Shown piece after piece: positions 8,880 to 15,884 of a stretch of DNA of 64,000 bases; the first letter of the stretch is position 1, and every line of letters starts with the position of its first letter. The notes under the pieces were generated by a model. That model saw nothing but the letters and a program-made list of their open reading frames with translations, ran no database searches and was not told where the DNA came from. Location: contig JAWQFM010000024.1 in NCBI GenBank assembly GCA_033442325.1, positions 1,020,596 to 1,084,595 of the forward strand, in the 5' to 3' direction. Both the position numbers and the translations under genes were made by a program. The stretch comes from Salpingoeca rosetta. Lineage: Eukaryota > Protista > Choanoflagellata.

Positions 8880-9338
8880 CACGTGTTCCTTGTGAGGGGT
8901 TGTCTTCTCTCGCCGTGTGTATTGAACGAACCAAGTGTTATGTTACAGCAAACACCTTTCATGACAAGGGAAAGCAGTGGTGGATAAACGGGGTGCGGCA
9001 GCAGGGAGGGGAACGTGCTGTGTACAATCAAGACCCAAAGCGGCGACAAGCAAGCAGGCGCAAATATAAAAAAAAAACCGACAATGGTGAATGATGTCAA
9101 GTGACAATGATGACGACGACGATGGTGGTGATGATGATACAGTATAGCGGTGGCAGCAATGTCTTTCCTCATGAGGACTCGCTGCTCTCTCCAGAGGCAC
9201 AAGCGTACAGTAACAAAGCAAGCAAGAAACAAACACAAGAAGCAAAGCAGACGCATGCCAGTTTGCCTGCAGGCAAGACAAGTAACACATGTTGTGGCGC
9301 ACAACCAACAACCAACAAACACTGTTAGCCCTGTGCCG

Positions 9339-9727
9339 TCAGTTCTGCTTTTGGCGGTTGACTGGGCGAAGCACGGAGCAGCAGTGAAACTTGGTAAAGT
9401 CGAAGACAACCTTGTTCTTCTTGTGGTGTGTCATGGGCTTGAACGCTGCGTCTGTCAACAGATGCGCAGACGTGTACTGGTGGTAGTGGTACACCGGCTG
9501 CATGCTCTTCTCGTCAATCCCAGATAGCAGCACGGAGAACTCAATGTCCTATGGCATGGTGATGGTGACGTGGGTCGTGGTCGTGGTGAGCACGTACGTT
9601 TTTGTTGGAACGGACAGTCGTGGTGGGGCGTTGAGTGTGTGAGCCAGTCGAGCGTCAAATGGGTTCAAGGGTTCAAGCACGACGCAGACAAGCTGAACAA
9701 TATCCGATGCCTGCAAGGCACAACGCA

Positions 9728-9788
<61 letters not shown>

Positions 9789-10744
9789 TCGTACGCACAC
9801 AGTACCTGTGCATGCAACTTCTCCCAGTTTTCGTTGAGCAGCGGGGATTCGCTGTCAATGACGTGCACACAACTCCACATCACAGGCATGGCGGCCGTCT
9901 CGTGCGCAACCTCAAAGGGTGAAAGAGGGGTTAATGATCAAAGCAAGCCACCCGGTGCATCGGTTTGTGTGTTGGGATGTGAGAATAGGCTCATGCTGCA
10001 AACATCAGAGTGACGCAACATTCAAACTTGGAAAACACGCAGCCGACACGCAGAAGCACACGCAAGGGTGTCATGATTGTTGAGGATTGTCGGTTGGTAT
10101 CCTTCATCCGTTTCAACTCACCAGGGGCAGGCGGATAAAGCGTCTGCGTGCAGACCCGTGCTGCAGACGGGGCGTGAATCCCATCGTCACTTGCACGCGA
10201 GCCTTTGGAGACAGAAGGAGGGCGTTGACATTGAAGAATTTGAGGGTGTGGCGTAGCGGCAAGGCGTTGATGGCAATTGCACACGTGTGCGACAAAGACA
10301 AGCAAAGCACCAGGTAGCGAGTGCGTGGCATGGTCATGACGTGAACATGCAACACTCGAACAAGAAGTGTTGTCCGTATTCTCCTCAACTTCTTTGAGTG
10401 TCCGTTCAACGTCAACTTCAATGGAAGAGTACAAGCACGAAAGCACCCACACATGCACAAATATATTCACACACGCGAGCGCACACACAGACACGCGCGC
10501 GCACAGATAACATGCGTTCCATTACTGCGGGCTTGAACGCTCGTACCTGAAGAATGCGACGCGATGTGCCATAGAGGTTTCCGATGCGAAACTCGAGTGT
10601 CTTGCGTGACGTGATCTCACGATTGTCGCCCATGCATATCCTGGCATGGATTGATCGATTGGTGTGGGCACATCAGACAGGGTAGCGGTGTGTGTTGTAA
10701 AGGCACATCCACGCGTGCATGTTGTAAAAGGCGCGCGCGCGCGC

Positions 10745-10811
<67 letters not shown>

Positions 10812-12613
10812 GTGTGCGTGTGTGCGTGTGTGCGTGTGTGCGTGGTGCACACGATGCATATGCAGGTACACACAAGCCCGCACACGTACCACTTGGAAAA
10901 GAGAATAAAGGGTGGTCGTTTCGAGAGACGCATGATGAAGAAGCCGAGGAATGCAAGCCGAAGCAGAGTTCCGAGGACAGATACCGCCTGTTGATCAACA
11001 ACCAGTCGTTGTAAGCGCTCGCACCGGGCAGCACGCCAAATAAATAAATTGCATGCAGGCAAAGAGCAAGCGCCCGAGCACGAACGCAAGCTCACACCAC
11101 AAGCACAGAAGCAGTGACGATTGTACATACACAAACACACGCACACCAAACAGACGCACACGCACACCAAACAGACGCACACGCACACACATACCCACAC
11201 ACGCACACACATGCGCACAGTCTCTCTTACACAACACAGACACATACAGCACTCACCATGGCTGTTACGTAGACTGCGCCGTCCATACTGAGCCTCACAG
11301 CACACCAATCGTCGCTGTTGGTGAGGAGAAGCGAGAGCATGGATTGGAAGCACTGCCATGCTGTTGCACGCCGTGTGGCAACCTCAGCGCTGCCGGATGT
11401 GGCTGAGCACGGTGCGTCATCACGCACGTGGGCATGCAGGCCGAAGTAGAGCAAACCGGATGCAAGGAACGCAATCATGACGATGATGAGCACCAGCTCC
11501 GAGATGGTGCGAAACATGTGCCGCGCGTGGTGGGTGTACCGCAGGTAAGGGCTGAGCCCAAGGCCCTTGACGCGCGTGCGCGCGTGACGGGAGCCACTGC
11601 CTTTCATTGCAGCGCTGCTGTGAAGGAAGAAGAGCGGCGAGCTGCCGTCGTAGTCCGCATGCGAATGGGAGAGCGCATATCGGCGCTCCCGGCTGTCCTT
11701 CGCACCGCCAAACCTGTTCCGCAGCCAGCGCAACGGGCCACGCCCATCTGTGCCAGTCTCCTCAGATTGCTTGCGCGCACGCGCGCCTTTGGTATTGTTG
11801 GATGACTGCGTGGATGCAGCCAGCGCCTCGGGGCGTTCGTTGCGAACAGACACAACCCTGCCGACGGGCACGCGCGTCTCGTCCTGCTGCTGGCTGGCGG
11901 CGGGGCCAGGAGGGGTGGACGTGGTGGTGGGCGGTGCCGCGGTGGCGCCGTTACTGAGGTTGAAGATGGCGCTTGGCTTGTGCGCATCGCCGTCAAGGAA
12001 GCGCTGTCCGCTGCCGCGCGGTGTGCTGCCGACGGAGCTATCACCTCCGTGTTCCGTGAATGCCCCGAGATGGTCGTCATGCGAATAGGAGGAGTTATGT
12101 GTGTCTCGTGTGTGCGGCCCGGATGAGCCGTCACGCCCACTGGGTGACTGCTTGTTCGATGACACCGCTGTGTGCTGGCGATAGCGCCGCCGCTGCTGAT
12201 GCTGTTCCAGGTCCTGGGATGTGACGCTGGCTCGCGTCTGCTCAAACATGCGAAAGGCGTCTGACCCAGCAGAGTGGCGGTGTGCTGGCTCGTTTCCGAG
12301 CGACTCCACTGACACGCGAGCCGCGTGTGCGTGGGAGGGGCTGGTGGCGGATGCGTACATGGCTGAAGGGTACATCACTTGCGAGCCCGCAGTGACGTCG
12401 AGGACGGAGTGGCTGTCGTCATTGTGGTGGTGCTTCTACATGGTGAAGGTGGATGCATGCAGTGAAGGAGGGAAGGAAGGGAAGATGTAGGAAGGAATGT
12501 GTGAGTGTGACGGGTGGAGTAAGGTGAATGGTGCTCGCATGCACAACCGCATAAAAGCAAACGTGCACTGACAGGCAAGGCATAAGGATGTGTGTGTGTG
12601 TGTGTGTGTGTCT

Positions 12614-12700
<87 letters not shown>

Positions 12701-12849
12701 TGTCTGTCTGTGTCGATCCCGTCATGGTTCCCTGTCGCATAGAAGGGGGGGAAGGAGGGTGCAAATCTCTCTCACACACGCACACACTCGCTCACGCACA
12801 CACTAGCTCACGCACACACCTTGCGACGGCGAAAGAAGAGGTTTGGCAT
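9339..12849 (-). CDS. Inward-rectifier K+ channel (Kir)-like protein with a non-canonical selectivity filter
   Basis: Exons approx. 12849-12820, 12435-11257, 10987-10890, 10640-10548, 10202-10122, 9910-9806 and 9548-9339 join in frame. They encode M1 ([21 protein letters not shown]), M2 ([33 protein letters not shown]), [31 protein letters not shown] and FDFTKFH. These match the Kir cytoplasmic-domain motifs FRVGNL, HxIDxxSPL, FEIVVILEG and VDYSRFH. Confidence 0.85.
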
Positions 12850-13320
12850 GGTGCTTGTCCTTGTTGCTGTGGGGAATGCTGGTGCTGTTGCTTGCAAGCA
12901 AACAAGGACGTGTGCAAGAAGGACCGGCTAGCTAGTGGGGGCGTTGTTTTTGTCGTTGCGGATTTGTTTTGCTTTCTTTCTTTCTTTCAATCTCTTCGCC
13001 ACAAACCAACAAGCAAAGGAAGCAAGAAGCAAGCAGCAGCACGCACTCCACTGACAACACCACAATCTACACAACCAAAACAAGCAGGCAAGCAAGCAAG
13101 GGAACACACACGGGAGACAGGCACAATCTACACAAGCAAGACAAGCAACAAGCAAGCAACCAAGCAAGAAGCAGGCACACATGACACACAGCAAGAGGCG
13201 GGGAAAGGCAGAGCAGCATCGATCACGCGAGAACTTGCTGCACATCCTTCATTTACCCCCCCCCCCATCCCAAACACACACACACAGATGTGCGCACGCA
13301 CGCATGCACGAAGGTGCGTC

Positions 13321-15884
<2,564 letters not shown>

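What the first reader, a model, noticed from the sequence alone, without database searches (positions are those of the whole stretch)
11257..11500. Kir-fold channel whose K+ signature TIGYG is replaced by TNSDD
Seen: between M1 and M2 the spliced protein reads ...[53 protein letters not shown]|AVSVLG. TNSDD is encoded at 11322-11308 within one exon, so a skipped exon does not explain it. Known: Kir channels have PC...AFLFSIETQTTIGYG.RC, with GYG/GFG forming the K+ filter and an E-R salt bridge behind it. Here the pore-helix register and flanking cysteines are kept, but GYG, the Glu and the Arg are gone and acidic residues occupy the filter. The M2-cytoplasmic domain is intact. Inference: a Kir scaffold converted to a non-K+ channel, possibly Ca2+/Na+-permeable or non-selective given a potential ring of Asp, or a silent regulatory subunit. 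This could be an undescribed channel class in animal relatives.
Basis: partly seen in the sequence, partly recalled or inferred. Interest (0 to 1): 0.85.

Follow-up and report, generated by a model that had tools for sequence, protein, structure and literature searches.

The report
Choanoflagellate Kir-like channel without GYG filter
A transcribed Salpingoeca rosetta gene encodes a protein with the full inward-rectifier potassium-channel architecture, but the K+ filter TxGYG is replaced by an acidic T-x-S/T-D-D-W loop that is conserved in other choanoflagellates, so it is a real, undescribed channel variant whose ion selectivity is untested.

Summary
The gene is S. rosetta PTSG_08486 (598 aa, minus strand, 7 exons). 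My splice model equals the annotated protein. Transcript contigs from two studies show all six introns removed as annotated, with the TNSDD exon uninterrupted.

Pfam finds only IRK_C. The transmembrane part hits no Pfam or PDB sequence. Profile-profile alignment (E 4e-43) and two AlphaFold models (one built from GYG-less sequences only) give M1, pore helix, loop, M2 and a Kir beta-domain. The closest structure is KirBac3.1 (Z 20).

TNSDD lies in the TxGYG columns, with a register uncertainty of about one residue.

It is not a one-off. Monosiga brevicollis, Choanoeca perplexa, C. flexa and two environmental relatives carry LLT[GNS][ST]DD[WL]. The pore helix and loop are the best conserved segment. 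Two intron positions are shared.

A wider GYG-less clade, probably choanoflagellate, separates from 106 relatives, nearly all GYG-bearing.

New here: the cavity position of Kir2.1 D172 is Arg, a clade-specific change.

S. rosetta also keeps at least two canonical TIGYG Kir genes.

Ion selectivity is inferred, not shown. The scan noted another GYG-less Kir on other DNA of this genome. This is a new variant of a known kind.

The parts
12820..12849 (-). CDS exon 1 (Met1-Lys10) of PTSG_08486
   Evidence: joint 12435/12820 in RNA contig
11257..12435 (-). CDS exon 2 (residues 11-403): disordered N-terminus, N-terminal beta-strand VKGLGL, slide helix/M1, turret, pore helix, TNSDDW loop, start of M2
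   Evidence: X4 contig with 0 mismatches
11425..11550 (-). Slide helix plus M1 (residues about 306-347)
   Evidence: AlphaFold helices
11320..11361 (-). Pore helix [14 protein letters not shown] (residues 369-382); C372, F373, S378, L381 and T382 are invariant in the orthogroup
11305..11322 (-). Filter-position loop T382-N-S-D-D-W387, in the columns of TxGYG
10890..10987 (-). CDS exon 3 (residues 404-436, first 2 nt of Trp436): rest of M2 and the M2-CTD linker [14 protein letters not shown]
10958..10960 (-). Arg413 codon, at glycine-hinge+4, the column of Kir2.1 D172
10547..10640 (-). CDS exon 4 (residues 436-467)
10122..10202 (-). CDS exon 5 (residues 468-494)
9806..9910 (-). CDS exon 6 (residues 495-529)
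9339..9548 (-). CDS exon 7 (residues 530-598 plus TGA stop)
9381..10597 (-). IRK_C cytoplasmic beta-domain (residues 451-585, across exons 4-7, introns included)
   Evidence: Pfam PF17655 32.9 bits; Kir2.1/Kir3.2 cytoplasmic-domain fold Z 17-19

Best explanation
PTSG_08486 is a functional, expressed member of a choanoflagellate branch of the Kir/KirBac superfamily. It keeps the whole Kir machine: an N-terminal strand, slide helix, M1, pore helix, M2 with both glycines, and the IRK_C cytoplasmic gating domain. Its conduction pathway has been rebuilt in two places. First, the carbonyl-cage filter TxGYG is replaced by a loop T-[G/N/S]-[S/T]-D-D-[W/L], which would put four to eight carboxylates and four hydroxyls at the outer pore. 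Second, the cavity-lining 'rectification controller' position (Kir2.1 D172) is Arg. It therefore cannot work as a K+-selective inward rectifier. Most likely it still assembles as a tetramer gated through its cytoplasmic domain. Ion passage or ion binding would then be governed by side-chain charges, giving a non-K+-selective pore with an outer acidic divalent/cation-binding ring. Shown: gene, transcript, fold class, loss of GYG, conservation of the new motif and of the Arg. Inferred: tetramer, conduction, selectivity.
For: The gene model equals the deposited protein and the spliced RNA contigs. IRK_C is detected. KirBac3.1 aligns at E 4e-11 from M2 to the end. hhalign of clade profile against GYG-bearing profile gives probability 100%, E 4e-43, over 254 columns from M1 to the C-terminus, with T-G-T-D-D opposite T-V-G-Y-G and hinge Gly, lower Gly and Arg423 all aligned. 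AlphaFold gives pLDDT 86.7 with a 150-sequence alignment and 89.2 with an alignment of GYG-less clade members only (one, P0014, has a residual AGYG). Both give M1, a pore helix ending at T382, a loop, M2 and a beta-domain. Fold matches are KirBac3.1 (E 1e-19, Z 20.1), Kir2.1/Kir3.2 cytoplasmic domains and Kir6.2. Orthologues in Choanoeca perplexa, C. flexa, Monosiga brevicollis, a TARA scaffold and a JGI contig carry LLT[GNS][ST]DD[WL]. The pore helix and loop are 36% invariant, against 10-25% for the other regions. Intron positions are shared. The orthogroup (SH-aLRT 98) and the wider GYG-less clade (99) are separate from 106 relatives, nearly all of which carry GYG. A basic residue or Gln (R, K or Q) stands at hinge+4 in 8 of 10 clade members, and R/K never occurs there in 121 others. 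From the literature: acidic filters give non-selective or Ca2+-selective pores in the same pore fold (NaK TVGDGN, PMC9822992; CavAb TLDDWSD, PMC8677417), and disease-associated mutations in GIRK channels abolish K+ selectivity (bioRxiv 10.1101/2021.08.18.456735 abstract).
Against: No functional data exist. The transmembrane half has no detectable sequence similarity to any Pfam or PDB entry on its own. hhalign confidence over the five filter columns is low, so the register may be off by one (one search gives the shifted version). The Arg ring in the cavity would repel cations and may mean a blocked or non-conducting pore. The pore-loop motif differs among the wider clade (VTGSNEG, VGSNDG, ATGFAGE, APAGYG), so there is no single shared selectivity. 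The tetramer prediction gave no answer. Expression in the one raw RNA run that covered it is low (11 reads).
Confidence: 0.45

Rival explanations
1. It is a non-conducting Kir-fold protein (a pseudo-channel). The pore is permanently closed or plugged by the Arg413 ring. The protein acts as a sensor, scaffold or extracellular cation-binding receptor that uses the conserved cytoplasmic domain for signalling.
For: Loss of every K+-coordinating feature. A clade-specific basic residue at the cavity position that is hydrophobic, Thr or Asp in 121 GYG-bearing relatives. Variable loop motifs across the wider clade. Low expression.
Against: The pore helix and loop are the most conserved part of the orthogroup. 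This is unexpected if the pore had no role in handling ions. M2 keeps both gating glycines and the hydrophobic L417/I421 stripe that matches the Kir bundle-crossing gate.
Confidence: 0.27
2. It is a modifier subunit that co-assembles with the canonical TIGYG Kir paralogues of S. rosetta and changes their selectivity or silences them, like weaver-type or dominant-negative subunits.
For: S. rosetta has at least two canonical Kir genes, at C2:1.708 Mb and C2:1.397 Mb. Kir subunits commonly heteromerise (established knowledge).
Against: The transmembrane domain is too divergent to match the IRK model at all, whereas the canonical paralogue scores 1e-26. The clade is a separate deep branch. No co-expression or interaction data exist, and this was not tested here.
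Confidence: 0.12
3. It is a pore with reversed or mixed charge selectivity, for example anion-permeable because of the Arg ring. That would be unprecedented for a tetrameric P-loop channel.
For: A conserved Arg/Lys at the cavity-lining column.
Against: The invariant Asp-Asp at the outer mouth and the pore-helix dipoles favour cations. No anion-selective P-loop channel is known (own knowledge).
Confidence: 0.08
4. It is an annotation or assembly artefact, or a decaying pseudogene whose filter has drifted.
For: Only that the TM region matches no HMM.
Against: The ORF is intact over 7 exons. Spliced transcripts come from two independent studies. Full-length transcript-derived orthologues have the same architecture. 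The motif and intron positions are conserved.
Confidence: 0.03

Closest known systems
KirBac3.1 / KirBac1.1 (prokaryotic inward rectifiers)
   Same: These are the best sequence and structure matches: E 4e-11 from M2 to the C-terminus, Foldseek E 1e-19, and Z 20.1 over 254 residues. The architecture is the same: N-strand, slide helix, M1, P-helix, M2 and IRK_C.
   Different: KirBacs carry T[IV]GYG and a hydrophobic residue at hinge+4. This protein has TNSDDW and Arg413. It also has a 290-residue disordered N-terminus and a longer turret and post-filter loop. Its TM domain does not score with the IRK or Ion_trans_2 models.
Animal Kir2.x and the canonical S. rosetta Kir (G000:C2:1707990-1709326)
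   Same: IRK_C domain, two M2 glycines nine residues apart, and a basic residue before the RP linker. M1 reads [11 protein letters not shown], against the AFLASWLLFG recalled for Kir2.
   Different: The canonical paralogue reads FLFSVETQTTIGYG, with Asp at hinge+4 and IRK Pfam E 1e-26. The studied gene has lost GYG and the pore-helix Glu (now Ser378), has no Arg after the filter, and has Arg instead of Asp in the cavity.
NaK (TVGDGN) and CNG-type non-selective P-loop channels
   Same: The same pore fold: the TM domain matches NaK at Z 9.5. The filter begins with Thr at the end of the pore helix and contains Asp (PMC9822992 for the NaK sequence).
   Different: NaK keeps both glycines of the filter and has no Kir cytoplasmic domain. 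No sequence similarity is detectable. This is a functional analogy only.
BacNav-derived Ca2+-selective filters CavAb TLDDWSD / CaChBac TLDDWAD
   Same: The motif Thr ... Asp-Asp-Trp follows a pore helix (sequences from PMC8677417).
   Different: There is one extra residue between Thr and Asp-Asp. Those filters sit in 6TM Ion_trans channels, and P0001 shows no Ion_trans hit. Trp is Leu in Monosiga. This is a resemblance of motif, not homology, and it was not tested structurally.
GIRK2 weaver-type selectivity-filter mutants
   Same: A Kir scaffold with a damaged GYG that loses K+ selectivity (bioRxiv 10.1101/2021.08.18.456735 abstract; the weaver G156S detail is from own knowledge).
   Different: Those are single pathological substitutions. 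Here the whole loop is replaced and is conserved between genera.

Membership tests
Kir/KirBac superfamily | IRK_C cytoplasmic immunoglobulin-like beta-domain (Pfam PF17655) | tested here: met
   32.9 bits against a cut-off of 22.5, residues 451-585. 12 of 18 clade sequences match. The fold matches Kir2.1/Kir3.2 cytoplasmic domains at Z 17-19.
Kir/KirBac superfamily | IRK transmembrane domain by sequence model (Pfam PF01007) | tested here: not met
   No hit at E<=10 for P0001. 0 of 18 clade members hit at E<=1. The canonical S. rosetta paralogue scores 1e-26.
Kir/KirBac superfamily | M1, pore helix, loop and M2 topology, continuous with the cytoplasmic domain | tested here: met
   hhalign covers M1 to the C-terminus, E 4e-43. 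AlphaFold with two different alignments gives the same elements. KirBac3.1 matches at Z 20.1. This rests on prediction, not on a solved structure.
Kir/KirBac superfamily | K+ signature T-x-G-Y/F-G | tested here: not met
   TNSDD stands in those columns. Nearly all of the 106 non-clade relatives in the tree carry GYG/GFG.
Kir/KirBac superfamily | Pore-helix Glu/Gln and post-filter Arg behind the filter (Kir2.1 E138-R148) | tested here: not met
   That column is Ser378 in the orthogroup, against Q (90) or E (9) in the others. The post-filter position is Cys/Ala.
Kir/KirBac superfamily | Neutral or acidic cavity residue at glycine-hinge+4 (rectification controller) | tested here: not met
   Arg413. 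R/K/Q is found in 8 of 10 clade members, and R/K is absent from 121 others.
Kir/KirBac superfamily | Homotetramer | tested here: inconclusive
   Complex prediction on 4 copies of residues 300-432 scored 0.13 against a mark of 0.32, 'no answer'.
Kir/KirBac superfamily | K+-selective, inwardly rectifying current | not testable with these tools
   Needs electrophysiology.
Voltage-gated-like Ca2+/Na+ channels with T-x-[DE]-x-W filter (Ion_trans) | Ion_trans (PF00520) pore domain | tested here: not met
   No Ion_trans or Ion_trans_2 hit at E<=10. Only the DDW motif resembles it.
NaK/CNG-type non-selective P-loop channels | T-[VI]-G-[DE]-x filter with retained first glycine | tested here: not met
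   The loop is T-N-S-D-D in S. rosetta and T-G-[ST]-D-D in orthologues. The glycine, where present, is one position earlier.

The most novel reading that the evidence does not exclude
The T-x-[S/T]-D-D-W loop forms a side-chain (carboxylate) selectivity filter on a Kir scaffold. That would make a 2TM, cytoplasmic-domain-gated Ca2+/divalent-selective or divalent-sensing channel class in the closest relatives of animals. It would have converged on the Asp-Asp-Trp solution of Ca2+-selective BacNav derivatives, with the cavity Arg ring tuning conductance as the Q/R site does in AMPA receptors.
Probability: 0.15. Interest if true: 0.85.

Novelty: new variant of a known kind. Interest (0 to 1): 0.62.

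Why it matters
Kir channels are textbook K+-selective pores, and the GYG cage is thought to be nearly untouchable. This is a natural, conserved and expressed lineage that kept the entire Kir gating apparatus and replaced both the filter and the cavity charge. Nature has in effect swapped the filter on a well-understood scaffold. That makes it a direct test bed for how much of K+ selectivity and rectification lies in the filter and how much in the scaffold. It also adds an uncharacterised channel type to the ion-channel toolkit of choanoflagellates. The only survey found says Kir channels were seen in most choanoflagellate species but 'not analysed' (PMC11287247). S. rosetta is genetically tractable, so the question can be tested.

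Tried and rejected
1. Skipped GYG exon. Rejected: the RNA contigs join exon 2 directly to exon 3, the 269-nt intron is GT/CA-rich, and the transcript-derived Choanoeca orthologue has the same layout.

2. Sequence search of the TM/pore profile (A4) against PDB gave no hit at E<=10. The TM assignment therefore rests on profile-profile alignment and predicted structure.

3. Complex prediction, four copies of residues 300-432: 'no answer' (score 0.13). This is evidence neither for nor against a tetramer.

4. Word-based protein searches found almost nothing beyond the query itself. The exhaustive HMMER search was what revealed the family.

5. The metagenome scan with the motif pattern found only the JGI contig already known.

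6. dN/dS was not attempted.

7. The species of origin of the wider clade members P0004 and P0008 (EukProt, Trinity 'comp' names like the Choanoeca entry) and of P0007, P0013 and P0014 (Logan) could not be established.

8. The pore exon of the S. rosetta C26 Kir-like gene was not found with either profile.

9. Durell & Guy 2001 on KirBac filter variants could not be read.

Full report
**What is in the window.**
The finding lies in the 3' part of exon 2 of a minus-strand gene. I located the splice sites by sequence and joined seven exons: 12849-12820, 12435-11257, 10987-10890, 10640-10547, 10202-10122, 9910-9806 and 9548-9339. The product is 598 aa. It is identical to the deposited protein 'hypothetical protein PTSG_08486 [Salpingoeca rosetta]', which UniRef names an inward rectifier potassium channel.

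**Transcription and splicing.**
- Contigs of two runs from different studies (X4, 2024; X7, 2011) were laid on 9300-12900. They carry every annotated joint with CT..AC ends, which is GT..AG on the minus strand.
- The X4 contig spans 11256-12435 without a single difference at depth 27.
- No run shows an additional exon between M1 and M2.
- A stranded raw RNA run (X16) gave only 11 reads, all in exons with the first mate on the plus strand. This fits a weakly expressed minus-strand mRNA.
- A contig over 10175-10525 shows some retention of intron 4.

**Family assignment.**
- Pfam detects only IRK_C (32.9 bits, residues 451-585) and no transmembrane family.
- phmmer against PDB sequences gives KirBac3.1 at E 4e-11, aligned from M2 (about residue 401) to the end. 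Kir2.2, KirBac1.1, Kir3.1 and Kir6.2 follow.
- A profile of the TM region alone finds nothing in PDB at E<=10.
- None of 18 clade sequences hits IRK or Ion_trans_2 at E<=1. The canonical S. rosetta paralogue's TM exon scores 1e-26 on IRK.
- A profile-profile comparison of the GYG-less clade (A2) with 42 GYG-bearing relatives (A6) gives probability 100% and E 4e-43 over 254 columns, from M1 to the C-terminus.
- In that alignment CFTALVSLLLTGTDD lies opposite CFFFSVQTFTTVGYG. So T-x-x-D-D occupies the T-V-G-Y-G columns. The hinge Gly, the lower Gly and the basic residue before the RP linker are aligned in M2.
- hhalign's per-column confidence is high in the pore helix and low (2-5) over the five filter columns. 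A 150-sequence MAFFT alignment shifts the loop by one residue. The register is therefore good to about one residue.

**Predicted structure.**
- AlphaFold2 on residues 295-598 with the 150-sequence alignment gave pLDDT 86.7.
- A control used an alignment containing only clade members and their fragments, none with a canonical T-x-GYG motif (P0014 keeps a residual AGYG). It gave pLDDT 89.2 and the same elements.
- The elements are a long slide/M1 helix, a pore helix 369-382 ending exactly at T382, a loop NSDDW..., M2 396-425, and a beta-sandwich domain.
- Foldseek matches KirBac3.1 (E 1e-19), Kir2.2, Kir6.2 and GIRK2 over nearly the whole length.
- VIA-align on the clade-only model gives KirBac3.1 Z 20.1 (254 residues) and Kir2.1 and Kir3.2 cytoplasmic domains Z 17-19. 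The TM half alone matches generic tetrameric pore modules such as Kv, NaK, TRPV and NavRh at Z 8-9.6.
- These are predictions, and AlphaFold knows the Kir fold, so they support but do not prove the topology.

**Relatives.**
The exhaustive HMMER search with residues 290-598 found 678 proteins at E<=1e-3.
- The closest are P0002 (Choanoeca perplexa transcript, E 1.5e-52), P0003 (Monosiga brevicollis XP_001745107, 1e-30), fragments P0028 and P0005 (Choanoeca flexa), and P0015/P0152 (a TARA Oceans metagenome scaffold). One search added P0155, a JGI contig 80% identical to C. perplexa.
- Their filter-position sequences are LLTNSDDW (S. rosetta), LLTSSDDW (TARA), LLTGTDDW (both Choanoeca and the JGI contig) and LLTGSDDL (Monosiga).
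- Within the TM region the invariant residues cluster in the pore loop: C372, F373, S378, L381, T382, D385 and D386.
- For the three complete orthologues, the pore helix and loop are 36% invariant (44-60% pairwise). The other regions are 10% (M1), 10% (turret), 15% (M2) and 25% (cytoplasmic domain).
- The introns after ...VTAM and after ...FSKW (phase 2) stand at the same positions in the TARA and JGI genomic contigs.
- This pattern is what purifying selection on a working pore loop predicts. It is the opposite of a decaying filter.

**Wider clade.**
- P0004, P0007, P0008, P0013 and P0014 group with the orthogroup in a quick maximum-likelihood tree of 114 sequences. Fragments P0006, P0096 and P0156 are similar by sequence but were not in the tree.
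- The clade has SH-aLRT 99 and the orthogroup 98. Long branches are a caveat.
- It stands apart from 106 relatives, nearly all with T[IVL]G[YF]G.
- Loop motifs in the wider clade differ: VTGSNEG, VGSNDG, ATGFAGE, LSAPAGYG. The common denominator is Thr-Gly after the pore helix, often followed by amide or acidic residues.
- A few other sequences among the 106 have also lost GYG independently (TKLANP, SLSVG, TVDYS). Atlas clusters from green algae and diatoms have IRK_C but rarely the IRK TM model. GYG-less Kir-like proteins may therefore be more widespread than is recognised.

**A second remodelling.**
- In M2 the column four residues after the glycine hinge is Arg413. That column is Asp in Kir2.1 (D172, own knowledge), in the canonical S. 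rosetta Kir and in the eukaryote-type P0124.
- It is R in six clade sequences, K in one and Q in one. It is never R or K in 121 non-clade sequences, which have F, T, V, L or M there.
- R413, L417 and I421 repeat the D172, I176, M180 stripe of Kir2.1.
- From established Kir and KcsA structures this column lines the water-filled cavity just under the filter. That it does so here is inferred, because I had no coordinates.
- Four guanidinium groups there would disfavour cations and abolish polyamine/Mg2+ rectification.

**Genomic census.**
S. rosetta has at least five Kir-like genes:
- two canonical genes, at C2:1.708 Mb (FLFSVETQTTIGYG) and at C2:1.397 Mb (SIETLTTIG | ..GYG, split by an intron);
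- the present gene;
- a paralogue at C13:0.241 Mb belonging to the GYG-less clade (SASIAGYTDTD);
- a divergent gene at C26:0.661 Mb whose pore exon I could not find.

The scan's own notes list another first-stage finding of a 'Kir-family channel lacking the TxGYG filter' on another piece of this genome (s1-443244). It is probably one of these paralogues.

**Mechanism.**
- Shown: an intact, expressed, conserved Kir-architecture protein without any K+-coordinating signature, with a conserved acidic loop and a conserved cavity Arg.
- Inferred: it tetramerises (homology only; the complex prediction gave no answer) and is gated by its cytoplasmic domain.
- It cannot select K+ by the canonical mechanism. 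Loss of K+ selectivity after mutations in GIRK channels is documented (bioRxiv 10.1101/2021.08.18.456735). Acidic filters on the same fold give non-selective (NaK TVGDGN, PMC9822992) or Ca2+-selective (CavAb TLDDWSD, PMC8677417) pores.
- I rate an ion-handling pore with non-K+ selectivity at about 0.45, a non-conducting pseudo-channel at about 0.27, a heteromeric modifier at about 0.12, anion or other selectivity at about 0.08, and artefact at about 0.03.

**Novelty.**
The locus tag occurs in no paper of the library. Searches for choanoflagellate Kir channels returned only passing mentions. [quoted passage not shown] The protein is in public databases as a hypothetical or IRK_C-containing protein. 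I therefore class it as a new variant of a known kind: a member of the Kir superfamily by fold and cytoplasmic domain, but not a Kir channel by the defining filter.

Noticed in passing
window 10958-10960 (-), Arg413: The cavity-lining 'rectification controller' column (glycine hinge+4, Asp in Kir2.1 and in the canonical S. rosetta Kir) is Arg here. It is R/K/Q in 8 of 10 clade members, and R/K never occurs there in 121 GYG-bearing relatives.
   Followed up: yes
G000:C13:239886-243173 (L011/L013): A second S. rosetta gene of the GYG-less Kir-like clade, with pore region ...FSASIAGYTDTDL.... Its closest relative is P0006.
   Followed up: partly
G000:C2:1707990-1709326 (L004/L016) and G000:C2:1396827-1397039 (L005/L015): Two canonical Kir genes with TIGYG. 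The first has Asp at hinge+4 and IRK Pfam E 1e-26. So the genome holds both canonical and remodelled Kir types.
   Followed up: partly
G000:C26:659793-662903 (L003/L014): A fifth, divergent Kir-like gene with an M2 end and IRK_C start (...MAVRKLMKPRTAITFTRKLVV...). Its pore-loop exon was not found with either profile.
   Followed up: partly
window 13321-14198 (-): The upstream neighbour is an ELO/GNS1 fatty-acid elongase gene (Pfam E 3e-11 and 1e-6). One of its open frames contains a run of about 45 Asn codons next to the HxxMYxYY-type motif. Whether the run is coding or intronic was not checked.
   Followed up: partly
window 10175-10525: An RNA contig of run X4 covers intron 4 unspliced at about 0.3 of the exon depth. 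This is partial intron retention or pre-mRNA.
   Followed up: no
window 12771-12801 (intron 1): Five reads and one contig match only this 30-nt GT-rich stretch, with T>A at 12792 and unrelated flanks. They are probably transcripts of a similar repeat elsewhere, not an alternative exon.
   Followed up: no
L018:2360-2372 and L019:1030-1045, 1235-1245: Environmental relatives (a TARA scaffold and a JGI contig) have introns at the same two codon positions as S. rosetta introns 2 and 3.
   Followed up: yes
P0069, P0132, P0093, P0061, P0108, P0147: Several other Kir/KirBac-like proteins outside the choanoflagellate clade have also lost GYG (TKLANP, SLSVG, TVDYS, SLQTD, QGMAG). Atlas clusters from green algae and diatoms carry IRK_C but seldom the IRK TM model.
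   Followed up: no
window 9720-9796, 10725-10846, 11100-11250, 12590-12720: Every intron of the gene carries long (CA)n/(GT)n microsatellites.
   Followed up: no
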